From positions 62,001 through 126,000 of the IMG/VR virus record IMGVR_UViG_3300027963_000035: a stretch of 64,000 nt of DNA. One strand, 5' to 3'. Shown one piece after another: positions 33,852 to 62,536 of the stretch; the first letter of the stretch is position 1, and the number at the start of each line of letters is the position of its first letter. Position numbers and translations under genes: made by a program. Below the pieces are notes generated by a model. That model did not search any database. It had not been told where the DNA came from and worked only from the letters and a program-made list of their open reading frames with translations.

Positions 33852-34715
33852 ATGAGTGAAAAATTATTGACTATCGGAATGGCGACCTATGATGATTATG
33901 ATGGAGTGTATTTCTCTCTCCAAGCACTTCGCATGTATCACGAAGTATGCAACACTGATCAGGTTGAATTTTTAGTCATAGATAATAACCCAAAAGGTAA
34001 ACATGCCGAACCGGTTAAATCTTTTGTTAATAGTTGGGCCAGAGGAAGATATATCCCATATGAAGAAAAGAAAAGCACTGCAGTAAGAAATGAAATATTC
34101 AAGCAAGCAAAGGGCAAGTATACCATATCAATGGATTGCCACGTTTTATTTCAAAAGGGTGCAATAGAAAGTCTTTTGAAATATTATGAACAAAACCCTG
34201 ATTGCAAAAACATAGTTCAGGGACCTCTTCTTTATGACGATTTGCGAAATGAATCTACAAGCTTTTCTCCGGTCTGGAATCATTCCATGTATGGGACCTG
34301 GCACACAGATCATGAAAACTTGAAAAAAGGTGAGCCTTTTGAGATTCTCATGCATGGTCTTGGTGTTTTTTCATGCGAGACCAAGAATTGGGTCGGATTC
34401 AACCAGCACTTTAAGGGATTTGGCGGAGAAGAAGGTTATATTCATGAAAAATTTAGAACACGTGGGGGCAAAGCAATTTGTATCCCTCAATTAAAGTGGG
34501 TTCACCGGTTTGGTAGGCCCGAAGGCGTTAAATACCCTCTTGTTCTAGAGGATAGAATTTGGAATTATTTTGTAGGTTGGCTTGAATTAACATGCAACCC
34601 GGAACATGAAATGATAAAAGGAGCTTACAATCACTTCAAAGATAAGATACCTGCGGGAAGCATAGACAAGATTCTAAACAATGCTAAAAAGCTGGTCCTA
34701 GAATCACCAGGCTGA
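33852..34715 (+). CDS. Glycosyltransferase, GT2-like (GT-A fold)
   Basis: LTIGMATY, EFLVIDNNP, RNEIF..AKGKYTISMDCH, FKGFGGEEG. Confidence 0.82.
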   Translation: MSEKLLTIGMATYDDYDGVYFSLQALRMYHEVCNTDQVEFLVIDNNPKGKHAEPVKSFVNSWARGRYIPYEEKKSTAVRNEIFKQAKGKYTISMDCHVLFQKGAIESLLKYYEQNPDCKNIVQGPLLYDDLRNESTSFSPVWNHSMYGTWHTDHENLKKGEPFEILMHGLGVFSCETKNWVGFNQHFKGFGGEEGYIHEKFRTRGGKAICIPQLKWVHRFGRPEGVKYPLVLEDRIWNYFVGWLELTCNPEHEMIKGAYNHFKDKIPAGSIDKILNNAKKLVLESPG

Positions 34716-35909
34716 TGTTGAATATATCTTTTTCCACTTATTAACTTTGTTATCAGAAAGTCCGCAAGGAGTTGAAACCTGCTGGTAATTATTTCTTTCT
34801 GCTTGATACATGCTGATAAGATGTGCGATATCTTCTACTTCTCTTGATTCCCACCCCGCTGATAGTAAAGCAAATTTAACTTGTTCTATTGCTTTATCTT
34901 TCATCAACCAAGCAGAAGTTAAAAATCTATCATTGTAAGCTTTTTCTGGCACGTCGTCCACAGCTAAATTATCTAAAGGATAAACTGTATTTAAAAGACC
35001 TGTGTTTTTATACATATCCAAATATTTTCTGTCATTTATTTCGGGATTCTCGAGACCAAGAATGTATTCCCTTTTATAGTTTTTATTTAGATCGTTTATT
35101 TTTCCCATAGATTCGATGTGATCTTCAGGGATGTCTTCATTTCCGTATCTGGCTTGCATTCTTATATATCTATGTGCTGTCATTGGGTCATCTTCAACTC
35201 TTTTTGAGAACTTCCCGATAGAGATTATTTGACCATTTTTAAGATGATGAGCACCACCATAAACATCAAGTAGTTCTGTGTTTTCTCCTTCACTATTTTT
35301 AAGTGGAATATACATTGCATTTATTGTAAAGTCTCTTGATGCTGCATCGTCTTCTAAGCTTGATGTTGCTGAAAATCCATCAACATTTAAATTCCTATTC
35401 TTAATGGATTTTGACAAAGGAGATAATTCAAAGTTTTCTCCGTTAATAACAACTGTGAATTCTACGGGCTTATTTTTATCATCCATCCTACTGGCAAAGA
35501 AACTCTTGTTACTTCTCGGAGTCTGAGTTTCCTCAAAACCATTTCCCTTTAAAATTAATTTAATTTCGCTTGATGTGGCATCTGTTACAAGATCATAGTT
35601 TCTCGGGGTCTTTCCTTTTAGATGATCACGAACTGCCCCACCTGTTAAGTAGACGACTTTCTTTTTAAGTTTTGGTTCAACCTCACCATCTGTTTTATCC
35701 ATGGTGGTGTAACCAACACCTATTTGTGGGCTATTTTCGAAAGCTTTTATAAGCAATCTTAAACTGGGGTGGTTGTCTTTATCGATTACGAATGGTTGGA
35801 AATCTTCTACTCCTGGATTCCTAGCCAATTTAACTTTTGAAACTACCGGAATATTGTTCTCTTTGTAGTTGTTCTCTTTGTATAAAACGTAATCTTGAAA
35901 TTTTCCCAT
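34704..35909 (-). CDS. Class II tRNA nucleotidyltransferase/poly(A) polymerase-like protein with altered catalytic motifs
   Basis: GGAVRDHL and RDFTINAMY are present, but the catalytic DxD reads NYD and the EDxxR template reads DDPMT; N-terminus MGKFQDYVLYKE. Confidence 0.8.
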   Translation of the reverse strand: MGKFQDYVLYKENNYKENNIPVVSKVKLARNPGVEDFQPFVIDKDNHPSLRLLIKAFENSPQIGVGYTTMDKTDGEVEPKLKKKVVYLTGGAVRDHLKGKTPRNYDLVTDATSSEIKLILKGNGFEETQTPRSNKSFFASRMDDKNKPVEFTVVINGENFELSPLSKSIKNRNLNVDGFSATSSLEDDAASRDFTINAMYIPLKNSEGENTELLDVYGGAHHLKNGQIISIGKFSKRVEDDPMTAHRYIRMQARYGNEDIPEDHIESMGKINDLNKNYKREYILGLENPEINDRKYLDMYKNTGLLNTVYPLDNLAVDDVPEKAYNDRFLTSAWLMKDKAIEQVKFALLSAGWESREVEDIAHLISMYQAERNNYQQVSTPCGLSDNKVNKWKKIYSTSAW

Positions 35910-35954
35910 TTTTTCACCTTTTGTTATTGTTATATATTGTTTTAATTTATTTTT

Positions 35955-36230
35955 TCACACTGAAGGGCTTTGTATTCCCAATTTATACAATAGATATGAA
36001 GCAACAACCACCCAGAATATCTTGACTATAAAATCAATCAGTTGATCCCAATTTTGTTGAGATCTTGATGTCCTAAGATTAATTCCTTCCATTTTAATTT
36101 CAAATTCTTGAATTTTCTTTGAGAAAGAATCCATCTCCGATGACATTTCTTTTATTTTATCTTCAAAATGCTCGATTTTGTGCTCGATGCGACCCAAGTC
36201 CCCAGATTGATTTTTTCTTTTTTCGACCAT
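35955..36230 (-). CDS. Small coiled-coil protein with a C-terminal transmembrane segment (holin/XhlA-like architecture)
   Basis: Heptad N-terminal region, then hydrophobic LIDFIVKIFWVVVASYLLY. Confidence 0.5.
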   Translation of the reverse strand: MVEKRKNQSGDLGRIEHKIEHFEDKIKEMSSEMDSFSKKIQEFEIKMEGINLRTSRSQQNWDQLIDFIVKIFWVVVASYLLYKLGIQSPSV

Positions 36231-36279
36231 TTTTTGTTATATACTTAAACTTTATAAACTTTCACTAATATATATAGTT

Positions 36280-36753
36280 ATGGAAAATCAAGATCAAATT
36301 ATAATAAGTCAAATAGATGATGCAAAAGAATTAATACCTCAAATGAACGTAGACCTTCCGTCCGTTCAGAATCAAAATGATCTCTCTCACATAGTTTCTG
36401 ATGAAGAATTGGCTGGAGTCTACAGCGAGATTCTAAATAATATAAGAGAAGATAGAAAACAAATAGATGAATTTATAGGTAATTTTGCCGATCTCGTAAT
36501 AAATGAGGGCGACAGCACCAGTGCAAGCAAAGAAGCTCTTGTAAGTTTGGTTAAGATAAAAAGCGATGTAGCGGATAAAATGGCTAAAATGGCAGATTTA
36601 ATGACAAGAATAAAGTTAAAAGATAAGGATACCTTCCCTAAATACTTAGCAGCCAATCAAAATAATACAATAAATATAAATTCAGGAAACAATAAAAGAC
36701 AGTTACTAGAAGCGATAAATAAAGCAAAGAAAGAAGCAAAAGATGAAAATTAA
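36280..36753 (+). CDS. Hypothetical helical protein
   Basis: 157-aa ORF, AATATATATAG directly upstream. Confidence 0.6.
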   Translation: MENQDQIIISQIDDAKELIPQMNVDLPSVQNQNDLSHIVSDEELAGVYSEILNNIREDRKQIDEFIGNFADLVINEGDSTSASKEALVSLVKIKSDVADKMAKMADLMTRIKLKDKDTFPKYLAANQNNTININSGNNKRQLLEAINKAKKEAKDEN

Positions 36754-38053
36754 TACTTTAAATTGGTTTAATGAAGAACTTGGAAATCCAGGCGAAGCCG
36801 CAGGAGGACAGCCTCCTTCCGATGCTACTGGCGGCAATCAGGTGGTGATGCAAAACAACACCTCCGAAGAACCACCACAGGACCAAAATACAGATGGGGC
36901 CCCAGAGGAGACAGAGATAGAACTCCCAAAACAAGATTCTCCGCAAGATTTATCGCAAGAACCACAATCTCCCGACATCCCAGAAGAACAAGAGGAATCA
37001 GAAGATTTTGAAACTTGGAAAATAAGCTATTTTAAAAATCTAGTTAAAGGCGACACAAGTCTTTTATTAAATGATATTCATAAAATCAGGGATTATGATT
37101 TAGAGGCTTATCCAAGAAAGTTTGTTGAAGACAATTTACAGATTCTTTTTTTAAGACAAAATTCTAATATAGAAAAAGCTGGTAAGGATATAAGAAAATC
37201 TATCAGACAGGAATTGGATAACAATAATCCCTCGATGTCAGTTGTCAACCACATCTTCACCTCACTTCAGAGTTATTCTGATTTAACAAATGTATTTATT
37301 AAGCTGAAGGGAACACTGGGCATGAAGAGTGACCTTCACAGAAAATATTTGGCCTCATTATTAGGTGCGGCCCAAGTTGGCAGTGGAGGAAACTCCGAAG
37401 ATATCATTTACAATGAAAGAACATATTCAATAAAGATATCAACAAGATTCAATGAAAAATGGGGAATGATAGATTTAGGAAAATGGTCCTTAAGGGAAGA
37501 CGACCCAGAAAGATTTTTGGAGGATCCCGAACTCAAGAGGCTAGAAGAAGGCAGCCCAGAAGAGAGAGATGTTCTAAGAAGAAGAGTTATCATGGAAGCT
37601 ATTGCAGATAATTTCAAGCAAAGATCTTTCCTCATAAACGTAGTGGGAGTAGATGGAACCGTTTATTTTGTAGGTTTAGATCTCGGAAGCTGTCTAAGCA
37701 CCGCTTATGCAGACGGTAAATTGTCAGTAAGAACAATACAGTCGGAAAACAGTGAGGCTATGATAGATGATGATGGAAATGTTGTTCCGTATGTAGATTT
37801 AAAGATCAAGTATTTATATGAAACAGGGGAGATTGATGAGAATGGATTTCCTAAAAAAGGAGAGTCCGACTTCATTGAGAGGATAGATGGAATTTTATTT
37901 GTGACAGCTCAACTAGATACTCTTAAGCAGGCTGCTGCAAGTTTTCCTGGAGTCATTGTTAAAGAACTTCCCTTTAACGGTAACCCATCAGACTTGAAAG
38001 TCATACAGAGATGTGTGCCCAGTGCAGCTGAAATAATTTTAAGGAACTGCTAA
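36743..38053 (+). CDS. Hypothetical protein with acidic Pro/Glu/Gln-rich N-terminus; possible internal head protein
   Basis: 436 aa; starts MKINTLNWFNEE; about 85 aa low-complexity acidic leader. Confidence 0.6.
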   Translation: MKINTLNWFNEELGNPGEAAGGQPPSDATGGNQVVMQNNTSEEPPQDQNTDGAPEETEIELPKQDSPQDLSQEPQSPDIPEEQEESEDFETWKISYFKNLVKGDTSLLLNDIHKIRDYDLEAYPRKFVEDNLQILFLRQNSNIEKAGKDIRKSIRQELDNNNPSMSVVNHIFTSLQSYSDLTNVFIKLKGTLGMKSDLHRKYLASLLGAAQVGSGGNSEDIIYNERTYSIKISTRFNEKWGMIDLGKWSLREDDPERFLEDPELKRLEEGSPEERDVLRRRVIMEAIADNFKQRSFLINVVGVDGTVYFVGLDLGSCLSTAYADGKLSVRTIQSENSEAMIDDDGNVVPYVDLKIKYLYETGEIDENGFPKKGESDFIERIDGILFVTAQLDTLKQAAASFPGVIVKELPFNGNPSDLKVIQRCVPSAAEIILRNC

Positions 38054-38063
38054 GGGATTAAAA

Positions 38064-38570
38064 ATGTATAAATTTTTTGATTATATTAACCAATCGGAAA
38101 TGCAGGCTCATAGGAAGCTTAAGATAATAAGCGATCTATTGAAGAGTCAAAAGATAAAAAATAAACTATTTGACTCGGACCAAGAACCTCATATTTTTGT
38201 ATTTTCAACTAATCCCGATACTTATTTTCAAGGAGTTAGAGTATATCCTATTGCTAATTCTATAGCATTCAAGGTTCAAAACAAGACGAATACTCATCCT
38301 TATGGAAAGCCATATCTGCTGGACTTTGAGAAAATGTATAATAATCTCATGGGACAAAAAGATGCAACAGAAGATGACTGTGCAAAAAATATAATTGAAT
38401 ACATATGTGCTGAACTTAAAAAATTCTTCACTATGAGTGCCAAATATCAATATGAAAAGAATCCTGAAAACATTAAATTAATGGTCAGATCACAAGGAAC
38501 AGACTACTCAACTAAGTTGTTTGGTGGTGCATCCGGAGATTATTCCTCTAAAGTTTACAATGGGTATTAA
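38064..38570 (+). CDS. Hypothetical protein with capsid-targeting-like N-terminus
   Basis: Starts MYKFFDYINQSE. Confidence 0.6.
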   Translation: MYKFFDYINQSEMQAHRKLKIISDLLKSQKIKNKLFDSDQEPHIFVFSTNPDTYFQGVRVYPIANSIAFKVQNKTNTHPYGKPYLLDFEKMYNNLMGQKDATEDDCAKNIIEYICAELKKFFTMSAKYQYEKNPENIKLMVRSQGTDYSTKLFGGASGDYSSKVYNGY

Positions 38571-38571
38571 A

Positions 38572-38958
38572 ATGATAAGTTTAAATGATTATAAAAATTC
38601 TAAAAGCGTCAAGAGCCTAGTTCAGAAAATGTTTGAGGCACGCCAAGTGGCTCATGTTCACCATTTACAAACTAAAAGTTATAGTCAACATAAAGCCTTA
38701 AATGGATTTTATGATGGTATTCTGGATCTAGCGGATTCTTTTATTGAAACATATCAAGGTCAATATGGAATATTAAACGGATATGGAGATATTAGTATTT
38801 CTGATGTTGATATTGAAGATTATCTCCAAGATTGTGCAAAGATATTCATGCTTGGAAAAGATAGCATGAATGATAAAGACACTCATCTCAAAAATATTAT
38901 GGATGAGGTTGTAGCGCTAACTTACAGAACAATATATAAGATAAAGTATTTAAAGTAA
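38572..38958 (+). CDS. Ferritin-like four-helix protein (DUF5856-like)
   Basis: QVAHVHHLQTKSYSQHKALNGFYD.....ADSFIETYQGQYG...LKNIMDE....TIYKIKYLK; start moved to the ATG just after the upstream stop. Confidence 0.72.
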   Translation: MISLNDYKNSKSVKSLVQKMFEARQVAHVHHLQTKSYSQHKALNGFYDGILDLADSFIETYQGQYGILNGYGDISISDVDIEDYLQDCAKIFMLGKDSMNDKDTHLKNIMDEVVALTYRTIYKIKYLK

Positions 38959-38977
38959 CTCCAATTAAAGGAGAAAG

Positions 38978-39412
38978 ATGGACCTTATACAGGATGTTAA
39001 AAAAGGTAGTTTAGTTTCTTTTAACTACATGTTCCATAAGGCTGGTCATGATCCCAATCCAAATGTAATGGTAACAGCCGCAGACTCTTTTTATGTTTGG
39101 GGAATCAACGTTCATTATTTAACTTTCCCATATATAAGAAATCTATTACAAAAAAATTGTAATAATATTATGTTTGGTTACCCAAATATAAAGAGCGACA
39201 AATTTGTAACTTCGGCTTTTAGACAATACAAGAAAAATGGTATAAGGTCTTTAAAAAAACTTGATTGTGAATTTGTGTTAAATTTATTGGGATCTGCAAG
39301 GGCTCTCACTCCGGGAGAAGTTGAGGCTATAAGAAATACAATTAATGATCAAGTGAATCAGGCCATTAATCAAGTATCTGCGTTGAATCCCAATTCTAAT
39401 ATTTTAAGATAA
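38978..39412 (+). CDS. DNA end protector-like protein (T4 gp2-like)
   Basis: G..V.F.Y...DP.P.V...WGINVHYL...AFRQY...IRS pattern recalls the gp2 G(L/I)NxHYL motif. Confidence 0.6.
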   Translation: MDLIQDVKKGSLVSFNYMFHKAGHDPNPNVMVTAADSFYVWGINVHYLTFPYIRNLLQKNCNNIMFGYPNIKSDKFVTSAFRQYKKNGIRSLKKLDCEFVLNLLGSARALTPGEVEAIRNTINDQVNQAINQVSALNPNSNILR

Positions 39413-42285
39413 TCGCTAAATGATACCGCTTCCTCCATAGATTTGGAGGCAGCCTTTGCTATTAAATTCTTAATTTCTTCATCTATTTTATTTGCTTCTA
39501 CTTGAGTATCAATTAGCTTCTGTAGCAGCTTTTCATCGGCCTGAACATCTTGGTATTCTTTTCTGTATCTTTGGATAATTTCTGCAAGCTTCCTTTTACG
39601 CTGAACTGCTTCATAGATTTCGGTGTCTAGACCCGGTGCTAGTGTATAATCTATCTTAACGGAGTGGTTGGTGTTGATTCTGTATATTCTTCCCTCACTC
39701 TGCTCAGAGCTTTCAGGAGTCCAATCAAAGTCATTGACGATCATATTCTGAGCTGCGTTGGGAAAACTTATCCCAGTTCCACCCATTTTCATACTCATTA
39801 CAAGTGCTTTTGCATTGGGATCATTTGTAAATAGTTCTTTAACCTTTTCTCTTTCTGCTTTCTTTGTGCTAGAAAGGTATGTTATTACTTTAAAATTAGG
39901 ATTAATTTCTTTTAATTTAGCTGATAACTTGTTGTTTATTTGTTCGCCGGATTGAACGAAGTTTGTAAATATGACAACTTTACTTGCTGCGTAATTGTTT
40001 TCTGATTTTTCTTTATTTGAATTTATTATTTTCAAGGCTTTATCTACTGTGGAATCCACCTTTAGATGAGCAAGGATTTCTCTTGAGGCTATTAATTCTG
40101 ATATTGCTAAATTGGGATCCTTATAAGCCTTGAGTTTTTCTTTTAATTTTTTACTAAATTCTGATGTGTCTACGTCAGTTGTGTATGCATTAACTTCAAG
40201 ATTGGGCATTTCTCTTAATTCATTCTTTGTTCTTCTGACATAGACTCCCGATAGATTTAACCATCGATTTAGTTTCTCAGCGGCTTTGATCTTATCTCTA
40301 AATGTTCCTTCAATATAACTTCCACCATAACCACCGGGCACCATGCCCGCAAAATCTTTTTTAAACTTTCCTTCTTTTATGGAGCCGAGTGGGTGGCCGA
40401 TCATAATCAATTGATTCTTTACGTCCATAGGCTTGTTTGCACTTATTGTTGCACTGGCGCCCCATTTATAAGGTATGTTCTGAGTTGCGACGAGTATGTT
40501 CTGGCTTCTTTTGGACGTGCTGTGTTTTAGTTTGTGAAGTTCATCAAATATTGCTATTTCAAAATTTGTCCCGCTGACTGACTTGACAACATTATCCACT
40601 TGTTTTCCACTTGAAAAATTGTCGTAGTACAGAACGGTCCACTTCTTTGGATTCAATGCATCAGTTGAGATTTCGGATTTATCTCCTACAACATTTTTTA
40701 TCTCATCTACCCACTGCTGTTGAACCGATTTCAATGTAATCACAAGAGTTTTTGCGCCAGGAGTGTCTTGCATCTTCAACTCCGCAGCACTTATAAGCAT
40801 TGCAGTTTTTCCATATCCTGTTTCATCACCAAGTATTGCGTGATGTCTGCCGTACAAGAAGGTCACTCCATCTTTTTGCTGATCATATAATTCAAACTTA
40901 GATTCAGGTAGTTTTTCTTCTATTTTATCTTTTAATCCTTCTGGAACTTCCCCTTCGTATTTTGTCTTTTTGACTCCGCCATTTTTAAGTTTAGTTTGTA
41001 GGATTAGTTTAAGACTATTTGGGTTCTGCGTGTAATTGTCTGTTATTTCAAACATGTAACCGAATTTTTTAAGTGTTGCACCAAAAGATACATATTGTTT
41101 AAAATTACCCCTAACGATATAAGAATAGTTGTCTCTATCCCATTCGTAATTTGGAAATGTGTATTGCACAAGTTCCCTAAGGAACTCTTTTTGTTGAGGA
41201 GATACTCTTGTGTATAATATTTTTATATGAAGTTTATCGTCTCTTCCCTTGGAAGGATCTGTAAACTCTATTCTCTCACTGGCAGGCGCACTCTCGGATC
41301 CTTTTGTTGGTTTTTCTTCTTCTGAAGGATCGTCCGCAGATTGAACTGATAATTGATTCTTTTCCACAAAATCATCTATTGGTTTGGCATCTATTCCAAA
41401 TTCACTGAACTTTTTGATTACTTGGTCGTGAATCTTTCTATCCAATGATAATAAGAATCTTGTTGGGTTTCTTTCGTATGCCATTCCACTTGGAGAAAGT
41501 CCTGCTGCCTTAACCGCATCAAATAAGGCTTTACTTTTTTCAAACGGAACATTAAACTGTATGGCAAGCCTTTTGCCATATCTCTGGGTTTCTTCTACTC
41601 CTATAACATTAACATCTGAGGATGATCCGGTGTTTATTCCCGGGGCGGCAACTGCAGCCGATGCTCCTATTTTTTTAACGCCTATCTTTTTCTCACCCGC
41701 TACTAGTTCCACTATCTCATCAATGACTTCGGGCGAAACATAGTATGTATCTAGTGTGTTTTTATCTTGACTGAAGTATCGCCATGCTTCATATTGATGT
41801 TTTCCAAATTTATTTAAAGTTTTTTGGAGATTCTTTTTTTGTACTATTATCGCTTCTATTCTCCTGGATAGAGCTTTATCTATGCCTCCGGGAATTAAAA
41901 CTTTCACCTTGCCGTATTGTTTAGGAGCATTGTTATCAATTGTTATTTTGTCATCTTCTTGATCATGGAGCGACAATGAGTCTTTTATGTCTTTATTAAC
42001 TGCTGCCTTGATATCTTCATAATGAGTTACTTGGGTCTTTTTATATCTGTTTAATATTGATAAAATATTATTTGCCATTGCAACGGGTATGGTGTCTTCA
42101 TGATATTTTGGATCGCTAGTTATTCTCTTAAAAGACATAAAATCAGGCTTATTAAATCCTGTATCATCATATTCTACTGGGGCTCCTCTGCTGAACATTC
42201 CATCAAATGTGGATTTAAGCAATTGTATGCCAGGACCACCGACAAGATTTTCTTGATTCTCTACATAATTTTTAAATAAACTCAT
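39370..42285 (-). CDS. SNF2-family helicase/ATPase with a long N-terminal extension
   Basis: LYDQQKDG (Q motif), GDETGYGKT (Walker A), IFDELH (Walker B), SAT, KVVIFTNF, GGTGISF, DFDWTP...QSEGRIYR; N-terminus MSLFKNYVENQE. Confidence 0.9.
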   Translation of the reverse strand: MSLFKNYVENQENLVGGPGIQLLKSTFDGMFSRGAPVEYDDTGFNKPDFMSFKRITSDPKYHEDTIPVAMANNILSILNRYKKTQVTHYEDIKAAVNKDIKDSLSLHDQEDDKITIDNNAPKQYGKVKVLIPGGIDKALSRRIEAIIVQKKNLQKTLNKFGKHQYEAWRYFSQDKNTLDTYYVSPEVIDEIVELVAGEKKIGVKKIGASAAVAAPGINTGSSSDVNVIGVEETQRYGKRLAIQFNVPFEKSKALFDAVKAAGLSPSGMAYERNPTRFLLSLDRKIHDQVIKKFSEFGIDAKPIDDFVEKNQLSVQSADDPSEEEKPTKGSESAPASERIEFTDPSKGRDDKLHIKILYTRVSPQQKEFLRELVQYTFPNYEWDRDNYSYIVRGNFKQYVSFGATLKKFGYMFEITDNYTQNPNSLKLILQTKLKNGGVKKTKYEGEVPEGLKDKIEEKLPESKFELYDQQKDGVTFLYGRHHAILGDETGYGKTAMLISAAELKMQDTPGAKTLVITLKSVQQQWVDEIKNVVGDKSEISTDALNPKKWTVLYYDNFSSGKQVDNVVKSVSGTNFEIAIFDELHKLKHSTSKRSQNILVATQNIPYKWGASATISANKPMDVKNQLIMIGHPLGSIKEGKFKKDFAGMVPGGYGGSYIEGTFRDKIKAAEKLNRWLNLSGVYVRRTKNELREMPNLEVNAYTTDVDTSEFSKKLKEKLKAYKDPNLAISELIASREILAHLKVDSTVDKALKIINSNKEKSENNYAASKVVIFTNFVQSGEQINNKLSAKLKEINPNFKVITYLSSTKKAEREKVKELFTNDPNAKALVMSMKMGGTGISFPNAAQNMIVNDFDWTPESSEQSEGRIYRINTNHSVKIDYTLAPGLDTEIYEAVQRKRKLAEIIQRYRKEYQDVQADEKLLQKLIDTQVEANKIDEEIKNLIAKAASKSMEEAVSFSDYLKILELGFNADT

Positions 42286-43012
42286 GATGAAATATATATG
42301 AGTTTAATTTGAATTTTGGCCTCAAAACTTTTCTTTTAACATTTTTAAATTTTAGTAATCTTTCCCAATTATGTGTGTATGTATGGAATATTATCGCATC
42401 CATATATTCAAAGTCATTGATATTTTCTGGTATCTTAACATGATTTCTTTTAAAATAATTTTTATTTATATTATCATCATGAACTATTTGACTCATTAGG
42501 AATTCTTCCCTCACCCATTTATTATATCTCTCAAGCCAAACCCATAGTTCGGGGTGGGTTTCTTTTATTTTATTGAGCTTATCATTAAAGTCTTTGTATA
42601 TTTTTTTGTTAGATCCATTTCTAAACAATAGCACGCCTGAATTAATGGGCTTAAATAATTTAAAGTCTGCACTATAGGCCCACTTGTTCTCACAGCCCAC
42701 AATATCTTCTGGGTATTTATTTATTATTTTTTCTATATCATCAAATATAAAAGTGTCACTATCTATGTAAAATATATTGTCAAAGTCCAAATCGGCTAGA
42801 TATTGTTTGTTTGCTGGGAAGTATTCTGGGTCTATGTTCTTCACATACTTTGTTTCAACCATCAATTCTTCTGGAAACATGGTCTCATCATGTGTGCAAA
42901 AACATATTATTCTTATATTTTTGTTGAATTTTCTAAGCATTTTGATGCTATTAAGAGCCATTTTATGGTAATTTAGATTACCGTTTATTATGTAAACTAC
43001 CACAGAAGTCAT
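42272..43012 (-). CDS. Glycosyltransferase, GT8-like
   Basis: MALNSIKMLRKFN, FYIDSDTFIF (DxD), INSGVLLF, IIFH. Confidence 0.72.
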   Translation of the reverse strand: MTSVVVYIINGNLNYHKMALNSIKMLRKFNKNIRIICFCTHDETMFPEELMVETKYVKNIDPEYFPANKQYLADLDFDNIFYIDSDTFIFDDIEKIINKYPEDIVGCENKWAYSADFKLFKPINSGVLLFRNGSNKKIYKDFNDKLNKIKETHPELWVWLERYNKWVREEFLMSQIVHDDNINKNYFKRNHVKIPENINDFEYMDAIIFHTYTHNWERLLKFKNVKRKVLRPKFKLNSYIFHHEFI

Positions 43013-43033
43013 AAACTAATTATAGTTCAAATT

Positions 43034-46728: not shown

Positions 46729-46729
46729 A

Positions 46730-48821: not shown

Positions 48822-49265
48822 CTATTTTTTAATATGTTTTATGTTCCATATGCCACCGTCTCCTGAATCTGGAACAAAATCCTTATTTTTCGTGTAAGAA
48901 GGTTTTCCGGGTATTTTTTTTATGCTCCAGGGCTTTCCTTCTCCATATTTTGCCGAGAACCCATCTTTATTACTTTTTGGCTCAGAGGATTCGCCACCTA
49001 TGCCCTTTATACTCCACAAACCAGACTCGCCGCTATTTAATTTTGTATTTGACTCCCCAGGTATATGAGTTATATCAAACGATGTCTTATCTGTTGAATT
49101 GTAGATTCTTTCGTCTACGGACAGGTAAAAGATTGCATCCGCACTTCTTGTGAGGTACCACTGGGGCGGGTATAATCCTATTCCACCGTATCCCAATGGA
49201 TACAAACCAGTTTTGCCGCCAGGATTAGAACCTTCACTTATAAGCCAATCTTTAAAATTTAACAT
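48822..49265 (-). CDS. Hypothetical protein with capsid-targeting-like N-terminus and short internal repeats
   Basis: Starts MLNFKDWLISE; repeats FDITHIPG / WSIKGIGG / WSIKKIPG / WNIKHIKK. Confidence 0.6.
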   Translation of the reverse strand: MLNFKDWLISEGSNPGGKTGLYPLGYGGIGLYPPQWYLTRSADAIFYLSVDERIYNSTDKTSFDITHIPGESNTKLNSGESGLWSIKGIGGESSEPKSNKDGFSAKYGEGKPWSIKKIPGKPSYTKNKDFVPDSGDGGIWNIKHIKK

Positions 49266-49633: not shown

Positions 49634-49653
49634 CTAATAATATATAGTATATC
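49634..49653. promoter_or_regulatory. Putative bidirectional TATATA promoter element
   Basis: 20-nt spacer ctaataatatatagtatatc between divergent ATGs at 49633 (-) and 49654 (+); no SD on either side. Confidence 0.45.
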
Positions 49654-50472
49654 ATGAATTTTAAACTTTGGCTTGTCGAATCTAGTCTTAGGGATTTACT
49701 TAAGGATGTCCCTCAAAATCCCGAACACCACGCAGAGGGCGATGTTTTTAAACATACTAGAATGGTTAGAAACTCTCTTGATATTGCTAAAAGACTACTT
49801 AAGAAAGAGCAAGGAATTTTTCCCTTTTCAAAAATAAACTTTGATCTGTCTGATAAAGAGGAAAAGATTCTTAAGATTTGTGCTTGGCTTCACGATATTG
49901 GAAAAGCAAGTGCGACAACTGTAGACGGCATTCATTGGAAAGATGCCGCCGACACATCCGGTAAGATATCAGCACACCAGCACGATCAATCCCACCATTA
50001 CGAGCCAATGATAGATAAGCTTGGTTCAATGTGGAGTCCTATGTTATCGGCACTATCCCCTGATGAAATACAAGATATATACTTCTGTATTGATTATCAC
50101 ATGAGTCTTGGAAATGGATCTTTTTCCAAGAAGGTGTCTTCTGTTGTTTTCGATCAAGATGGAAATTATAAAAATGAAAGAAAAGTTAAACTTCTTCTTT
50201 ATATAATAACAATGGATTGGACTGGAAGAATATCTGGGAATAAGGGCGGTGAAAATGGGGCGCTAGACGCCATACAAGGTTTTAAAAATTCTGCGTATAA
50301 ATTATTAGAAAAAAATAAAATTATTAATAGCAGAAAGAAAACTTCCATAGATGATCCAAAAGAATTTATCTTATCCTTAAAAGGCAAGCCGATAGAAGTT
50401 ATCAAAAAAGCATTTATTAATAAATTCGGTAGAGAAATATCTGATGATGAGATTTCTTTAGTTGATTTTTAA
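49654..50472 (+). CDS. Stand-alone HD-domain phosphohydrolase of the CCA-enzyme/Pnkp-associated type
   Basis: QNPEHHAEGDVFKHT, AWLHDIGKA, HH, YHM, MD..GR; N-terminus MNFKLWLVES. Confidence 0.82.
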   Translation: MNFKLWLVESSLRDLLKDVPQNPEHHAEGDVFKHTRMVRNSLDIAKRLLKKEQGIFPFSKINFDLSDKEEKILKICAWLHDIGKASATTVDGIHWKDAADTSGKISAHQHDQSHHYEPMIDKLGSMWSPMLSALSPDEIQDIYFCIDYHMSLGNGSFSKKVSSVVFDQDGNYKNERKVKLLLYIITMDWTGRISGNKGGENGALDAIQGFKNSAYKLLEKNKIINSRKKTSIDDPKEFILSLKGKPIEVIKKAFINKFGREISDDEISLVDF

Positions 50473-50499
50473 TTATTTTTGCATTATAATAATATCATT

Positions 50500-50931
50500 A
50501 TGCTACAAGAAATAATATACTCTTGGCAAGATTTTGATTCAGATATGAGAATCTTATCTGGTCGTGTATCTGGGTCGGGTGTAATGCCTGATTTCATAAT
50601 TGGTATTAAACGAGGAGGATTAGTTCCTTCTATTAAATTCAGCCACATACTCTCTGTTCCTCTTAGAGTTGCAACAATTTATAAAGATAATATAACCATA
50701 GAATTAGAAGATGTGTCTAAATCTTCTAATCTACTATTGGTAGACGAAATTTGTGATAGCGGGGATACTCTACAAAGAATAAGATCACGTCTGACTTCAG
50801 AAGGTTTTTCAAACATATATTCGGCATGCCTGTTCTACAATATAAGACAATCTTTTACAGTAGACTACACTGCAAGAAAAATAGATCGAGAAAAAGAAAA
50901 TAGATGGATAGTTTTTCCTTGGGAAAACTAA
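50500..50931 (+). CDS. Type I phosphoribosyltransferase (purine PRT-like)
   Basis: IIGIKRGGLVP, LLLVDEICDSGDTL (PRPP loop), WIVFPWE. Confidence 0.88.
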   Translation: MLQEIIYSWQDFDSDMRILSGRVSGSGVMPDFIIGIKRGGLVPSIKFSHILSVPLRVATIYKDNITIELEDVSKSSNLLLVDEICDSGDTLQRIRSRLTSEGFSNIYSACLFYNIRQSFTVDYTARKIDREKENRWIVFPWEN

Positions 50932-54078: not shown

Positions 54079-54111
54079 TTTTATGTGCTTCACTTTGAGG
54101 TTAGAACTAAA

Positions 54112-57096: not shown

Positions 57097-57099
57097 TAA

Positions 57100-57735: not shown

Positions 57736-57790
57736 TCTTTAATTATAGATTATTTTTAGTTCAAATCAATATATATTAAAAAGGATAAAA

Positions 57791-58141
57791 ATGAACGATA
57801 TATTAAAACTCGCCGGTTTAACTGAACAAGTTGAAAAATTTAATAATTTCTCAGAAAAAAGATTTGATGGTGCAAAAAAGATATCTGAGATGGCTGAAGA
57901 AAAAGGTGGTCCCGCCCTTCTTACACATTATCACTTTGCCGTCAAACTTCCCTACTACAAAAAAGCCTTAGAAGGAAAGATGGACTTTGAAAAAAGCAAA
58001 GAAGAATATAAAAAGCTTTGTGAAAAACTTCATTCAATGATGGATAAAATAGAAGATGTAAACCAAAAAACATTCCAGGAACTACTTGGTAAAATGGAAG
58101 TTTTAGGAGAACTATTAATACAAGAAAAAAATTCTAAATGA
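57791..58141 (+). CDS. Hypothetical helical protein
   Basis: 116-aa ORF, AAGGA SD and AATATATATT upstream. Confidence 0.6.
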   Translation: MNDILKLAGLTEQVEKFNNFSEKRFDGAKKISEMAEEKGGPALLTHYHFAVKLPYYKKALEGKMDFEKSKEEYKKLCEKLHSMMDKIEDVNQKTFQELLGKMEVLGELLIQEKNSK

Positions 58142-58959
58142 ACTTCAAAGATTTTATCAACGAGTCGCCTGTAACCAATTTTGAACTAATGGGTCAATGG
58201 GGACCTGAAGCTAAGAGAAAATACGGATATAACACACAAGACTCGGGAATACTAGAAAATCCCAAGGCGGTTGAAAAAATACATAAGCACTGGAGCAACA
58301 GCAAGAGTAATTTTGAATTTTACTTTTTAAGAAGTTTTAAGGCAAGTAAACATGTCGAAGTCGGTCAAGTGACCCCGGAATGGGTTAAAGAGAATTTAGA
58401 AGTTGATATAAAGCCAAAAGAAGATTCTATAACCGTTATATTCACAAATAATACTGGGGCAGAAAAAATACCTATGACAGCTTGGTCCATGGCACATAGA
58501 TTAGGCCATGCGATTAGACGTGATAAAACTTTTGAAAGACATTTTAATGAAGAAGTCAGAAGAGACTTCGATGAAATATTACAATATGTATATGGAATAA
58601 GCACAGACAGATATAACACCCTGCGGCCAGACTATGAGAAGCAGAGAAAAGCAATCTTCTTAGCTGTAGGCACTATGAAAAGTGCAAGAAATAATATCCT
58701 GAGGAATAGTGATGAGTTCGTATATGAACTATTGGCCCAGTATATTATATCAGGTAAAATAACATTCAATGACCTTCCTAAAAGCCTCATAATAGACAGA
58801 AAGATGGCCTGGGGCAGACCCAACTATAGAACAAAGAATATGGTAGATGAAACAGCATACAGAGAATATAATGAAATGCTACACAATAATGCCGTTAAAT
58901 ACGAATATAATCTTGATACTATCTTCAATGGTCTTGAGGGATTGATGTTTGTAATGTGA
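58138..58959 (+). CDS. Hypothetical protein with capsid-targeting-like N-terminus and zincin-like HRxxH motif
   Basis: Starts MNFKDFINES; WSMAHRLGHAI followed later by YELLAQY. Confidence 0.62.
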   Translation: MNFKDFINESPVTNFELMGQWGPEAKRKYGYNTQDSGILENPKAVEKIHKHWSNSKSNFEFYFLRSFKASKHVEVGQVTPEWVKENLEVDIKPKEDSITVIFTNNTGAEKIPMTAWSMAHRLGHAIRRDKTFERHFNEEVRRDFDEILQYVYGISTDRYNTLRPDYEKQRKAIFLAVGTMKSARNNILRNSDEFVYELLAQYIISGKITFNDLPKSLIIDRKMAWGRPNYRTKNMVDETAYREYNEMLHNNAVKYEYNLDTIFNGLEGLMFVM

Positions 58960-59377: not shown

Positions 59378-59395
59378 ACTACTATATATTAACAT

Positions 59396-59476: not shown

Positions 59477-59489
59477 ACTATACTATGTT

Positions 59490-61058: not shown

Positions 61059-61094
61059 GAATATAATTCTATATGTTTATTGACAAACAGTCAA

Positions 61095-61298
61095 CTAGTA
61101 AAATATATTTCGGTATACAAACCAGAAGAATTGTATTATGGAGCATATTGCAGATATTACCATGATCATAGTAATTACCCCAATTGTGCATCCTCCTGCT
61201 ATTACAAATGATTTCTTCTTCTGATGATTTAAATACAAGTAAGAAAAAAGACAAGAAAAGAAAACTATTATCGGTAACGTGTAAATTAAATTATTCAT
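61095..61298 (-). CDS. Small membrane protein (two hydrophobic segments)
   Basis: 67 aa, two long hydrophobic stretches separated by KKK; co-oriented with neighbours. Confidence 0.45.
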   Translation of the reverse strand: MNNLIYTLPIIVFFSCLFSYLYLNHQKKKSFVIAGGCTIGVITMIMVISAICSIIQFFWFVYRNIFY

Positions 61299-61303
61299 AT
61301 AAA

Positions 61304-62536
61304 TTATGTATTATTTCTAAAATTAGAATATTCATCATCATTCATTCTGTCGCTTATTTCTTTTCCTTTTAAATGCATATAATCTTCTGATTTTGTGACT
61401 TGCTTATACATTAAAAAATATTTGATCTCTCTCTGTAGACCACTTATCTTACCAAATTCCATAAAAGATTTTTTAAGCTTGTCGCTTAAATTATCCCTCA
61501 TCCTTATCATTCTTATGATATTAGATTTATTTAAATCATAAGCTACTTTTAGAATAAACGCAACTGTGTCTGCTATTTCATTTGAATATTTTAATTCATT
61601 TAGTTTTGATCTTAATTTATTTGGATCATTATTTTTAAAAATTAGACTCATCACCGCAATTGGATCGTGAGAATCTATCTCTGAGCTTAAATCAACATTC
61701 AATCCGGGAAAAATTGTTGACAATAAATCTAACGCCTTATAGTTCATAATATAATTTTTAACATTCTTGCATTTACTCAACCCCGACAAAAATTCATTTG
61801 CAATTCTTTCTCCACTAACACCTTTTAAATCTTTGAATTTCTCAACTGCACTTATTGTTTTTTGATCTAAATGACTTGTAATAATGTCATCGTTGAATCT
61901 AGAGAAGAATCTAACAAGTCTCAACACTCTAAGTTTATCCTCTCTGAATCTTTCCTCGGGATCACCAACACTTCTAACAGAAAGATTCTTTATATCTTTG
62001 AATCCCTCGCCCTCTCCTTTGTGATCGAGGTTATAATCACGGATTTGCTTATCTTTTAAATCATAAAAGAGGGCGTTAATGTTGAGATCTCTGCGTTTTG
62101 CATCCAAACCCGGGCTGCTATATGAGACTTTATCGGGTCTTCTTCCATCTCCTTTTTCTGGATCGTAAAACTCGGTCCTGAATGTTGCTATTTCGAATTC
62201 TTTTCCATTTATAATGGCGCTTATTACACCAAAACTTTCTCCTTTTGGAAAAACTTTTATTCCATTCTCTACTGCTTCTTTAGAACTCAGTATTTTGATC
62301 ACCTGATCCGGTGTTTGATCCGTTGCCAGGTCAACATCTTTCGGATTATACGGAACATGCTTTTGATGAAATATGTGATACAAGTAATCTCTTATTGCGC
62401 CACCAACTGCGTATAATTTTGCTCCAAATTTTTTAAATATATCACTTAAAATGTCTACTTCTGATGGCATTGGTATGGAAGCACTCATTGCATGGTACTG
62501 TTCTTCCTCTTTTAGTAGCCAATTTTTGAATTTCAT
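61304..62536 (-). CDS. cca: CCA-adding tRNA nucleotidyltransferase (class II), catalytic motifs intact, no HD domain
   Basis: GGAIRD...KDVDLAT (DxD), FEIATFR, RRDLNINALFY, RFREDKLRVLRLVRF (EDxxR), VSGERI; start moved to MKFKNWLLKEE at 62536. CCA vs poly(A) specificity cannot be proven from sequence alone. Confidence 0.82.
   Translation of the reverse strand: MKFKNWLLKEEEQYHAMSASIPMPSEVDILSDIFKKFGAKLYAVGGAIRDYLYHIFHQKHVPYNPKDVDLATDQTPDQVIKILSSKEAVENGIKVFPKGESFGVISAIINGKEFEIATFRTEFYDPEKGDGRRPDKVSYSSPGLDAKRRDLNINALFYDLKDKQIRDYNLDHKGEGEGFKDIKNLSVRSVGDPEERFREDKLRVLRLVRFFSRFNDDIITSHLDQKTISAVEKFKDLKGVSGERIANEFLSGLSKCKNVKNYIMNYKALDLLSTIFPGLNVDLSSEIDSHDPIAVMSLIFKNNDPNKLRSKLNELKYSNEIADTVAFILKVAYDLNKSNIIRMIRMRDNLSDKLKKSFMEFGKISGLQREIKYFLMYKQVTKSEDYMHLKGKEISDRMNDDEYSNFRNNT

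What the first reader, a model, noticed from the sequence alone, without database searches (positions are those of the whole stretch)
34704..62536. Candidate virion-delivered tRNA 3'-end repair kit: active CCA enzyme + free HD domain + altered CCA paralog
Three genes spread over 28 kb (34704-35909, 49654-50472, 61304-62536) are linked by function and by the shared N-terminal tag, not by an operon. The intact CCA enzyme lacks an HD domain, while the free HD protein has the Q..EH..EG.V..HT / LHDIGK signature of the domain fused to many bacterial CCA enzymes, where (E. coli) it removes 2',3'-cyclic and 2'/3' phosphates. Together they could heal and rebuild tRNA acceptor ends damaged by defence toxins (e.g. 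toxSAS/CapRel pyrophosphorylation of the 3' CCA, acceptor-end nucleases, MenT-type extension). This differs from the T4 Pnk/Rnl anticodon repair route. The anti-defence role is inference; the enzyme might simply mature phage tRNAs encoded elsewhere.
Basis: inference. Interest (0 to 1): 0.8.

Follow-up and report, generated by a model that had tools for sequence, protein, structure and literature searches.

The report
Split tRNA-end enzyme with capsid tags
A freshwater jumbo phage with a T4-type head encodes a CCA-adding enzyme, a separate HD phosphoesterase that is fused to that enzyme in related phages, and a catalytically dead CCA-enzyme look-alike; all three carry a short N-terminal tag like the one phage T4 uses to load proteins into its capsid, but many unrelated genes carry the same tag.

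Summary
All three ORFs exist at the stated coordinates. 61304-62536 is a complete class-II CCA-type nucleotidyltransferase. 49654-50472 is an HD phosphohydrolase with every metal ligand. 34704-35909 is a CCA-enzyme paralog without the catalytic DxD.

- **HD and CCA link: strong.** In related phages the two orthologues form one HD-CCA polypeptide. Other HD homologues are fused to a polynucleotide-kinase-like domain.
- **Paralog: not shown to belong to a kit.** It is a member of a large conserved pseudo-enzyme family (0 of 113 keep DxD). It lies next to a conserved block of genes beside the tape-measure gene in all 77 loci.
- **Tag: real but not specific.** It marks 6 of 55 window genes (0.04 expected), about 21 genes in about 150 kb of this genome, and more than 95 protein clusters in relatives. 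It therefore does not define a kit.
- **Virion delivery: plausible, unproven.** The tag resembles T4's capsid targeting sequence MKTYQEFIAE. The same genome encodes a gp21-type prohead protease and a gp23-type capsid protein about 20 kb upstream.
- **The ordinary role is also supported.** The genome has four tRNA genes, none with an encoded CCA.

An anti-defence role remains inference.

The parts
61304..62536 (-). CCA-type class-II tRNA nucleotidyltransferase, 410 aa, all catalytic and templating motifs intact, no HD domain
   Evidence: Pfam PF01743 3e-22 and PF12627. Best solved relatives are human TRNT1 (1e-23) and a bacterial CCA-adding enzyme (3e-20). DxD and EDxxR are kept in 120 of 120 family members. 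Invariant columns are listed. It is 36-47% identical over its full length to the C-terminal halves of the HD-CCA fusion proteins.
62507..62536 (-). N-terminal tag MKFKNWLLKE of the CCA enzyme
   Evidence: The same tag type (M.F[KR].[FW]LE) occurs in 101 of 120 family members.
49654..50472 (+). Free-standing HD phosphohydrolase, 272 aa, of the CCA-enzyme-associated HD clade
   Evidence: An exhaustive phmmer search gave 95 relatives. Invariant residues are H26 E28 G29 H34 H80 D81 K84 H110 H149 D188. Homologues are fused N-terminally to CCA enzymes or C-terminally to AAA_33 kinases. The AlphaFold model has pLDDT 95. The best PDB matches by profile and by fold are 3WFO-3WFS, deposited as 'Poly A polymerase' / 'tRNA processing enzyme'. 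hhalign to the E. coli Cca HD domain gives E 9e-4 over residues 211-353.
49654..49680 (+). N-terminal tag MNFKLWLVE of the HD protein
   Evidence: Most HD homologues carry the tag. In the kinase-HD fusions it sits in front of the kinase instead.
34704..35909 (-). Catalytically degenerate CCA-enzyme paralog (pseudo-nucleotidyltransferase), 401 aa, with a family-specific N-terminal domain (about residues 20-85)
   Evidence: Pfam PF01743 1e-19. It has NYD for DxD and DDPMT for EDxxR. Zero of 113 family members keep DxD (NxD 92, NxN 12, GxD 4, DxH 2, SxD 2, DxN 1). Family alignment. Profile-profile E 3e-39 against the CCA family. The AlphaFold model has pLDDT 89 and matches whole CCA-adding enzymes at TM 0.55-0.6.
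35874..35909 (-). N-terminal tag MGKFQDYVLYKE of the paralog (variant form F..Y[FIL].[LY][RK]E)
   Evidence: It is conserved across the family and is followed in many members by a low-complexity linker.
48822..49265 (-). Tagged 147-aa protein of unknown function (MLNFKDWLISE)
   Evidence: No Pfam or PHROG hit. Conserved in relative L003.
58138..58959 (+). Tagged 273-aa protein of unknown function (MNFKDFINE)
   Evidence: No Pfam or PHROG hit.
39370..42285 (-). Tagged SNF2-family helicase, 971 aa (MSLFKNYVE)
   Evidence: Absent from the 88%-identical relative L003.
36280..39412 (+). Conserved four-gene block (157, 436, 168 and 144 aa), transcribed divergently from the paralog gene. In relatives it directly precedes the tape-measure gene. 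Probably tail genes (sheath, tube, chaperone), judged only from sizes and position.
   Evidence: Present next to the paralog in 74-77 of 77 loci and mapped to window genes. No Pfam, PHROG or Atlas name.

Best explanation
The window belongs to a freshwater jumbo myovirus (contigs of 251 and 323 kb) with T4-type head genes.

**HD and CCA.** Genes 49654-50472 (HD) and 61304-62536 (CCA) are the two halves of a bifunctional tRNA 3'-end enzyme. Related phages make it as one HD-CCA polypeptide, and E. coli makes it in the opposite order (Cca, nucleotidyltransferase then HD). The likely mechanism has two steps. The HD phosphoesterase removes a 2',3'-cyclic phosphate or a 2'/3' phosphate from a tRNA acceptor end. 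The nucleotidyltransferase then adds or completes CCA.

**Substrates.** The certain substrates are the phage's own tRNAs, none of which has an encoded CCA. Damaged host tRNAs are possible further substrates.

**Paralog.** Gene 34704-35909 keeps the whole CCA-enzyme architecture but has lost the catalytic carboxylates. It most likely binds tRNA or RNA 3' ends without polymerising.

**Tag.** All three proteins start with a roughly 10-residue peptide of the T4 capsid-targeting type. I infer that this peptide docks them on the scaffold core of the prohead, that the gp21-family protease cuts it off after its glutamate, and that the enzymes are injected with the DNA. The tag marks a large and diverse cargo set, not a three-gene kit.

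**Shown:** gene families, motif states, fusions, tag statistics, the head genes and the CCA-less tRNAs.
**Inferred:** enzyme activities, packaging and cleavage, and any anti-defence role.

The confidence given is for the whole statement. The HD plus CCA split-enzyme part alone I would put at about 0.8, and capsid loading at about 0.5.
For: **HD-CCA link**
- The exhaustive search found HD homologues of about 700-760 aa. Those scanned carry PolyA_pol C-terminal to the HD region, and their C-halves are 36-47% identical to the window CCA over its full length.
- Four IMG/VR contigs (L015/L098, L017, L078, L115) carry the same fusion as one ORF.
- Canonical CCA-HD proteins are also hit (P0081, P0089).
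- The best PDB matches for the HD protein, by profile and by fold, are chains of 3WFO-3WFS, deposited as 'Poly A polymerase' / 'tRNA processing enzyme'.
- The HD profile aligns to E. coli Cca residues 211-353. That domain has 2',3'-cyclic phosphodiesterase and phosphatase activity (PMC6961547, citing Yakunin 2004).
- Kinase(AAA_33)-HD fusions exist. One lies among aminoacyl-tRNA-synthetase-like genes.

**tRNA substrates**
- The same genome has tRNA-Thr, Leu, Glu and Lys, all without an encoded CCA.
- Distant CCA relatives sit beside arrays of 10-22 tRNAs, and 157 of 164 of those tRNAs lack CCA.

**Paralog:**

**Tag as a capsid signal**
- The T4 CTS is MKTYQEFIAE. It is cut by gp21 and is enough to package foreign proteins (PMC8442874, PMC5694885, PMC3012670).
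- Tags here read MKTFNEFIEQ, MKSFQEYLKD, MKNYQEAIVD, MNFKLWLVE and the like.
- The genome encodes Peptidase_S77 (5e-24 to T4 gp21) and Gp23 (7e-38 to T4 gp23) 20-23 kb upstream, with tagged small genes on both sides.
- The long array of small genes that holds the tRNAs has no tagged gene.
- The interdomain linker of 9 of 10 HD-CCA fusions keeps the tag motif.
- A TATATA-like upstream element is shared with tail genes.
Against: - No protein-level data exist. No cultured close relative has a virion proteome; the nearest record is an uncultured 595-kb phage, and Xanthomonas phage XacN1 (34% MCP identity) does not report its CCA enzyme in virions.
- The tag is longer or more variable than the T4 CTS. 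Only 4 of the 6 window tags end in a clean [LI]-x-E.
- Tagged proteins include very large enzymes (971-aa and 925-aa helicases), which would be unusual cargo.
- The tag motif kept inside the fusion linkers could mean it is part of the CCA module's own fold.
- HMM scores do not separate CCA-adding enzyme from poly(A) polymerase (NCBIfam 126 versus 118 bits, both far under cut-off).
- The HD protein's similarity to E. coli Cca HD is weak (E 9e-4, probability 23%).
- HD and CCA lie 11 kb apart and the HD family is much rarer than the CCA family, so many relatives manage without it.
Confidence: 0.55

Rival explanations
1. Housekeeping only. The CCA enzyme (with HD as an accessory) simply matures the phage's own CCA-less tRNAs in the cytoplasm. 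There is no anti-defence function and no need for virion delivery.
For: Four tRNA genes without encoded CCA lie in the same genome. CCA genes of distant relatives sit directly beside tRNA arrays that lack CCA. Jumbo phages with many tRNAs commonly carry this enzyme (PMC5852040).
Against: Ordinary 3' trimming leaves 3'-OH ends and needs no phosphoesterase, yet the HD partner is fused to the enzyme in many relatives. Kinase-HD fusions and a tagged HAD 'Swiss army knife' RNA-repair phosphatase in relatives point to end healing. This reading does not explain the tag. It is compatible with the main explanation rather than exclusive of it.
Confidence: 0.45
2. The N-terminal tag is not a capsid-loading signal. 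It has another job, such as translation start efficiency, a degradation or localisation signal, or binding to a common partner, so the proteins are not delivered by the virion.
For: The tag sits on a very diverse set that includes large helicases and a sigma-like factor. No proteomic evidence exists. The motif persists inside fusion proteins, where an N-terminal signal should not be needed.
Against: The tag closely resembles the experimentally defined T4 CTS (PMC8442874). The genome has gp21- and gp23-family genes, with tagged small genes clustered around them. Conservation is at the peptide level, not the DNA level. The array of small genes that holds the tRNAs has no tag.
Confidence: 0.35
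3. A dedicated three-gene kit, as first proposed: the CCA enzyme, the HD protein and the altered paralog act together, are marked as a set by the tag, and counter acceptor-end toxins.
For: All three occur on four IMG/VR contigs, two of them this same genome. All three are tagged. The paralog keeps a full tRNA-enzyme architecture.
Against: The tag is general. The paralog's invariant neighbours are the conserved block beside the tape-measure gene, not HD or CCA. Contigs exist with CCA and paralog but no detected HD. The HD family is rare. No defence-related evidence was found.
Confidence: 0.15
4. The enzymes act on other substrates. The nucleotidyltransferase is a poly(A) polymerase or A-adding enzyme, and the HD protein hydrolyses free nucleotides or signalling nucleotides.
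For: NCBIfam scores for CCA enzyme and PcnB are nearly equal and both below cut-off. The HD fold search also lists SAMHD1 and phosphodiesterases.
Against: Best solved relatives are CCA-adding enzymes. The tRNA context in relatives, the EDxxR templating motif, and HD fusions to CCA enzymes and a polynucleotide-kinase-like domain rather than to nucleotide-metabolism enzymes all argue against it.
Confidence: 0.1

Closest known systems
E. coli Cca (multifunctional CCA addition/repair protein: class-II nucleotidyltransferase fused to an HD phosphohydrolase)
   Same: The same two modules are present. The nucleotidyltransferase has all motifs. The HD domain shares the PQxPxxHPEGDxxxHT and HDxGK signatures, which align to Cca residues 211-353. 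The known HD activities (2',3'-cyclic phosphodiesterase, phosphatase) fit end healing before CCA addition (PMC6961547).
   Different: Here the modules are separate genes 11 kb apart. In relatives they are fused in the reverse order (HD first). The phage HD is a 270-aa protein with extra C-terminal helices, and sequence similarity is weak (E about 1e-3). Each half carries an N-terminal tag.
T4 internal proteins and Alt with the capsid targeting sequence (CTS), loaded on the scaffold core and cut by gp21
   Same: A short conserved N-terminal peptide of the same pattern (M-K/N-x-F/Y-K/Q-x-aromatic-L/I-x-E) sits on otherwise unrelated proteins. A gp21-family protease and a gp23-family capsid protein lie in the same genome. 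Tagged small genes cluster around the head genes. In T4 such cargo is a diverse set of injected counter-defence proteins (PMC3012670).
   Different: The cargo set here is far larger and includes RNA-end enzymes, helicases and a sigma-like protein. The tag varies more. Packaging and cleavage are not shown.
T4 Pnkp/Rnl and bacterial HD-Pnk (Runella) RNA end-healing enzymes
   Same: Relatives of the HD protein are fused to an AAA_33 polynucleotide-kinase-like domain. This is the same domain pair as HD-Pnk, a 2',3'-phosphoesterase plus 5'-OH kinase (PMC6097658).
   Different: The domain order is reversed (kinase first). No RNA ligase was seen in the window. The window's own HD has no kinase and pairs instead with a CCA enzyme, so it would act on acceptor ends rather than on anticodon breaks.
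CCA-adding enzymes listed among jumbo-phage RNA-repair genes (Iyer et al. 2021, PMC7824862)
   Same: That survey already predicts that jumbo-phage CCA-adding enzymes restore tRNA 3' ends in host-phage conflict, and it notes HD-like phosphatases in a few jumbo phages.
   Different: In the passages retrieved from that survey, the HD-CCA fusion or split pair, the DxD-less paralog family and the CTS-like tag on these enzymes do not appear. The survey was not read in full.

Membership tests
Class-II CCA-adding tRNA nucleotidyltransferase (gene 61304-62536) | Pol-beta-type head with GGxVRD and the catalytic DxD | tested here: met
   GGAIRD and DVD are present. PF01743 3e-22. 120 of 120 family members keep DxD.
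Class-II CCA-adding tRNA nucleotidyltransferase (gene 61304-62536) | Motifs B-E, including the EDxxR nucleotide-selecting motif | tested here: met
   DGRRP, RRDLNINAL, EDKLR and ERI are invariant columns of alignment A3. EDxxR is kept in 120 of 120 members.
Class-II CCA-adding tRNA nucleotidyltransferase (gene 61304-62536) | Curated equivalog score, and distinction from poly(A) polymerase | tested here: not met
   NCBIfam CCA model 126 bits against a cut-off of 290; PcnB model 118 bits. This is a divergent member, and specificity cannot be called from scores.
Class-II CCA-adding tRNA nucleotidyltransferase (gene 61304-62536) | Adds C, C, A to tRNA 3' ends | not testable with these tools
   Context only: CCA-less tRNA genes in the genome and beside relatives' genes.
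Class-II CCA-adding enzyme (paralog 34704-35909) | Catalytic DxD and EDxxR | tested here: not met
   NYD and DDPMT. Zero of 113 family members have DxD. The E of the FEIATFR strand is not conserved.
Class-II CCA-adding enzyme (paralog 34704-35909) | Head-neck-body-tail fold | tested here: met
   Foldseek top 40 hits are all class-II tRNA nucleotidyltransferases or poly(A) polymerases, mostly CCA-adding enzymes. E 2e-13 to 2e-6; TM 0.44-0.59 by query, 0.41-0.65 by target. Profile-profile E 3e-39 against the CCA family.
HD-superfamily phosphohydrolase, CCA-enzyme-associated clade (gene 49654-50472) | H...HD...D metal-binding residues | tested here: met
   H34, H80-D81, H110, H149 and D188 are invariant in 37 sequences.
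HD-superfamily phosphohydrolase, CCA-enzyme-associated clade (gene 49654-50472) | Match to the curated HD model | tested here: not met
   No Pfam hit at E<=0.01 for the window protein. Homologues P0007 and P0018 reach 21-22 bits, just under the cut-off of 22. NCBIfam HDIG 16.8 bits against 27.6.
HD-superfamily phosphohydrolase, CCA-enzyme-associated clade (gene 49654-50472) | Homology to the HD domain of bacterial CCA enzymes, or physical fusion with a CCA enzyme | tested here: met
   Fusions with orthologous CCA enzymes. phmmer hits to canonical CCA-HD proteins. hhalign to E. coli Cca 211-353 gives E 9e-4, which is weak. Best PDB matches are 3WFO-3WFS.
HD-superfamily phosphohydrolase, CCA-enzyme-associated clade (gene 49654-50472) | Phosphoesterase activity on RNA 3' ends | not testable with these tools
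   Inferred from E. coli Cca HD (PMC6961547) and HD-Pnk (PMC6097658).
T4-type capsid targeting sequence cargo | Short conserved N-terminal peptide shared by unrelated proteins and resembling MKTYQEFIAE | tested here: met
   6 of 55 window genes against 0.04 expected. More than 95 unrelated clusters in relatives. Pattern comparison. CTS sequence taken from PMC8442874.
T4-type capsid targeting sequence cargo | Genome encodes a gp21-family prohead protease and a T4-type scaffold and capsid | tested here: met
   Peptidase_S77 and Gp23 Pfam hits on the same contig. phmmer to T4 gp21 gives 5e-24 and to gp23 7e-38. The contig overlaps the window at 100% identity. The 298-aa gene between protease and capsid gene is scaffold-like by position only.
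T4-type capsid targeting sequence cargo | Tag ends at a gp21-type site ([L/I]-x-E) | tested here: inconclusive
   Four of six window tags fit: LVE, LKE, ISE, INE. The paralog (YKE) and the helicase (YVE) do not fit cleanly.
T4-type capsid targeting sequence cargo | Protein present in virions, with the tag removed | not testable with these tools
   No cultured close relative. The nearest records are uncultured.

The most novel reading that the evidence does not exclude
A large clade of uncultured freshwater jumbo and huge phages with T4-type heads uses a CTS-like N-terminal tag to load dozens of different enzymes into the capsid for injection. The cargo would include a tRNA 3'-end healing and rebuilding pair (HD plus CCA), a dead CCA-like tRNA binder, polynucleotide kinase and HAD RNA-repair phosphatases, helicases and a sigma-like factor. 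The phage would then arrive with a ready-made RNA-repair and takeover toolkit. The tag motif kept between the domains of HD-CCA fusions would be an internal protease site that separates the two enzymes inside the head.
Probability: 0.4. Interest if true: 0.8.

Novelty: new variant of a known kind. Interest (0 to 1): 0.62.

Why it matters
If the tag is a working capsid-loading signal, it gives a sequence-only way to read out the injected proteome of a whole clade of uncultured huge phages. It would also show that tRNA-end enzymes can be delivered with the genome, before any phage gene is expressed. That is relevant to defences that disable tRNA.

Three results stand whether or not the tag works that way:
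- The HD-CCA fusion or split pair extends the E. coli Cca design to phages in a new arrangement.
- The DxD-less paralog is a large, conserved, unstudied pseudo-enzyme family with a full tRNA-enzyme fold.
- The tag itself could serve as a tool for loading foreign proteins into T4-type capsids other than T4's.

Tried and rejected
- Nucleotide search of the window against known phages: no match. tblastn of the HD protein against known phages: no match.
- Direct sequence search of the HD protein against PDB: only noise.
- Pfam, PHROG and Atlas searches on the conserved neighbours of the paralog gave no names. Calling them tail sheath, tube and chaperone rests on size and on their position before the tape measure in relatives.
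It showed only that several hit contigs are the same ones that carry the CCA or paralog families.
- Rfam found nothing in 127 kb around the window.
- No RNA runs hold the sequence, so expression was not examined and read laying was not used.
- The C-terminal 455 residues of the kinase-HD-X protein P0020 have no solved relative.
- I considered that the two nucleotidyltransferases might be a CC-adding and A-adding pair. I rejected this because the paralog family lacks the catalytic aspartates altogether.
- I considered that the tag might be a DNA- or RNA-level start signal. I rejected this because codons vary synonymously and the motif is kept inside fusion proteins.
- XacN1 virion proteomics (the nearest cultured phage with data) does not list its CCA enzyme.

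Full report
**1. What the window is**

The window has 35% G+C and matches no known phage at the nucleotide level. It is identical to parts of two IMG/VR contigs of 251 and 323 kb. It carries a myovirus baseplate and tape-measure block at 6.6-31 kb. The sequence recurs in freshwater and lake metagenomes from 2017 to 2025.

I walked outward with exact-protein look-ups. All overlaps with the window were 100% identical.
- A T4-type large terminase lies about 8 kb upstream of window position 1.
- A head module in T4 order lies 20-23 kb upstream. It comprises a 595-aa portal-like protein, Peptidase_S77 (5e-24 to T4 gp21), a 298-aa scaffold-like protein and a Gp23-family capsid protein (7e-38 to T4 gp23).
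- The closest capsid protein in phage records is 75% identical and comes from an uncultured 595-kb phage. Cultured phages reach at most about 34%.

**2. The three genes**

*CCA enzyme, 61304-62536.*
- It is a full-length class-II nucleotidyltransferase with PF01743 and PF12627.
- Its best solved relatives are human TRNT1 and a bacterial CCA-adding enzyme.
- Its family has more than 3,000 members, many on contigs of 300-600 kb.
- GGxxRD, DxD, DGRRP, RRD..NA, EDxxR and ER..E are invariant in the family.
- Curated models cannot tell it from poly(A) polymerase by score. The solved relatives and the tRNA context favour CCA addition.

*Paralog, 34704-35909.*
- It is homologous to the CCA enzyme along its whole length (E 3e-39).
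- Its predicted structure (pLDDT 89) matches complete CCA-adding enzymes.
- It reads NYD where DxD should be, and DDPMT where EDxxR should be.
- This is not decay. The family has at least 289 members at 42-92% identity, and none of 113 scored members has DxD: NxD 92, NxN 12, GxD 4, DxH 2, SxD 2, DxN 1.
- The family also has a conserved N-terminal domain of its own.
- It is best described as a conserved pseudo-nucleotidyltransferase with an intact tRNA-enzyme scaffold.

*HD protein, 49654-50472.*
- It has no Pfam hit and no direct PDB hit.
- An exhaustive search found 95 relatives, and the H..HD..H..H..D ligands are invariant among them.
- The model is confident (pLDDT 95).

**3. The link between HD and CCA**

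This is the firmest result.
- The exhaustive search found HD homologues of about 700-760 aa, and those scanned carry HD at the N-terminus and PolyA_pol at the C-terminus.
- Their C-halves are 36-47% identical to the window's CCA enzyme from about residue 3 to the end. Their N-halves are 32-40% identical to the window's HD.
- The same single ORF is seen on four IMG/VR contigs.

The window's two genes are therefore the split form of one bifunctional protein. Further support:
- Canonical CCA-HD proteins are weak direct hits.
- The best PDB matches, by profile and by fold, are chains of 3WFO-3WFS, deposited as 'Poly A polymerase' / 'tRNA processing enzyme'.
- The HD profile aligns motif for motif with E. 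coli Cca residues 211-353, although weakly.
- That E. coli domain removes 2',3'-cyclic phosphate (PMC6961547).
- Other HD homologues follow an AAA_33 kinase domain, the domain pair of the end-healing enzyme HD-Pnk (PMC6097658). One such gene lies among four aminoacyl-tRNA-synthetase-like genes on a 346-kb contig.

**4. The paralog's company**

In 77 of 77 loci the paralog is flanked by the same genes. A small upstream gene is present in 65 of them. A divergent block of about 176, 446, 171 and 178 aa is present in 74-77 of them, and in most relatives that block runs straight into the tape-measure gene. In the window an inversion-like rearrangement has placed the tape measure on the other side.

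The paralog is thus a conserved gene beside that block. Its neighbours say nothing about HD or CCA.

**5. Co-occurrence**

- All three families occur on four IMG/VR contigs. Two are this genome, one is an 83-90% syntenic relative, and one is a 381-kb contig where the genes are dispersed.
- CCA and paralog occur together without a detected HD on at least two contigs.
- The HD family is much rarer: 35 loci, of which only about 12 are close homologues, against about 200 for each of the others. These numbers are lower bounds, because outputs are capped at 80 loci and most contigs are fragments.

**6. The tag**

- Six of 55 window genes begin with M-x(0-3)-F-x-x-aromatic-hydrophobic-x(0-4)-E. The expectation from composition is 0.04, and 0 of 335 internal Met positions match.
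- Codons differ synonymously between tags.
- The tag is present in most members of the HD, CCA and paralog families. In kinase-HD fusions it precedes the kinase, so it is portable.
- It is not specific to these enzymes. In the fetched neighbourhoods, 143 further tagged proteins fall into 95 clusters, with runs of consecutive tagged small genes.
- Tagged proteins with a recognisable family include a HAD 'Swiss army knife' RNA-repair phosphatase next to a paralog gene, an AAA_33 kinase, UvrD and SNF2 helicases, a sigma-70-like protein and an ankyrin protein.
- In this genome I count about 21 tagged genes in about 150 kb. Eleven of them lie around the head module. They include MKTFYEWLNE, MKSFQEYLKD, MKTFNEFIEQ and, on a 519-aa RNase_T-domain protein, MKNYQEAIVD.
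- The T4 capsid targeting sequence is MKTYQEFIAE. It docks internal proteins on the scaffold core, is cut off by gp21 and suffices to package foreign proteins (PMC8442874, PMC5694885).
- T4's CTS cargo is described as a diverse set of injected counter-defence proteins that share only the CTS (PMC3012670).
- The long one-strand array of small genes downstream, which holds the tRNAs, has no tagged gene.
- A TATATA-like element lies 6-45 nt upstream of 19 of 55 genes, against 3% of background windows. Those genes include HD, paralog, CCA and tail genes.

Together with the gp21-family protease, this makes capsid loading the best reading of the tag, but it remains inference. A puzzle remains: 9 of 10 HD-CCA fusions keep the tag motif in the interdomain linker. 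That would fit an internal protease site, or it could be a structural role within the CCA module.

**7. tRNAs**

- The window has none, and Rfam finds nothing in 127 kb around it.
- Between 18.6 and 35 kb past the window end, the same genome has tRNA-Thr(UGU), Leu(UAA), Glu(UUC) and Lys(UUU). None is followed by CCA.
- In distant relatives the CCA gene sits beside arrays of 10-22 tRNA genes, and 157 of 164 of those lack CCA.

It does not conflict with a repair role. The phosphoesterase partner is what argues for healing damaged ends, since normal 3' trimming leaves a hydroxyl.

**8. Comparison with what is known**

- A survey of jumbo phages already lists CCA-adding enzymes among RNA-repair counter-defence genes and mentions HD-like phosphatases (PMC7824862).
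- In the papers I searched and the passages I read, I did not find the reversed or split HD-CCA arrangement, the DxD-less paralog family, or a T4-CTS-like tag on such enzymes and on a very large cargo set in uncultured T4-headed jumbo phages. A search for the CTS together with T4-like phages and metagenomes returned only an unrelated paper.

**9. Verdict**

- The three-gene kit is not supported as a unit.
- The HD plus CCA pair is well supported as a split bifunctional tRNA 3'-end enzyme.
- Virion delivery is plausible, at roughly even odds.
- The anti-defence role is open.

Noticed in passing
L322 c10717-10909 and c10945-11017 (about 18.6 kb past the window end, same genome): A group I intron match (RF00028, 68.6 bits) lies 36 nt downstream of a complete tRNA-Thr(UGU) gene, on the same strand and outside any called ORF.
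   Followed up: partly
L323 990-17879 (about 18-35 kb past the window end): Four tRNA genes (Lys, Glu, Leu, Thr), all without encoded CCA, are scattered in a long one-strand array of some 40 small genes. None of those genes carries the N-terminal tag.
   Followed up: yes
L319:17093-18295 (about 38 kb upstream of the window start): A 1.2-kb stretch has no ORF and looks GC-richer than its surroundings, between a 70-aa gene and a tail-fibre-like gene. There is no Rfam match.
   Followed up: partly
window 39370-42285: A 971-aa SNF2-family helicase carries the tag. The whole gene is missing from the otherwise syntenic 88%-identical relative (L003).
   Followed up: partly
window 32118-34715, 42272-43012, 44443-46728: Several glycosyltransferase and methyltransferase genes are present (GT2, HtrL_YibB, GT34-methyltransferase fusion, and a weak TET-associated glycosyltransferase hit). 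They may modify DNA or virion proteins.
   Followed up: no
window 49271-49633 and 50479-50931: An HNH endonuclease gene sits head-to-head with the HD gene, and a phosphoribosyltransferase gene follows it directly. Both are conserved in relative L003.
   Followed up: no
window-wide, for example 49641-49646 upstream of the HD gene: A TATATA-like element lies 6-45 nt upstream of 19 of 55 genes (3% of background windows). It is often only 8-13 nt from the ATG, which suggests very short leaders and one shared promoter class for tail genes and tagged genes.
   Followed up: partly
window 26260-39412 compared with 77 related loci: In relatives the tape-measure gene directly follows the conserved four-gene block next to the paralog. 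In the window it lies on the other side of the paralog, which implies a local rearrangement.
   Followed up: partly
L318:2295-3854 (beside the capsid gene, about 24 kb upstream of the window): A 519-aa protein with an RNase_T (DEDD exonuclease) domain starts MKNYQEAIVD. This is the closest match to T4's MKTYQEFIAE seen in this genome.
   Followed up: no
L326:8001-10685 (346-kb contig of another huge phage): An 894-aa kinase-HD protein has an unassigned 450-residue C-terminal part and lies among four aminoacyl-tRNA-synthetase-like genes.
   Followed up: partly
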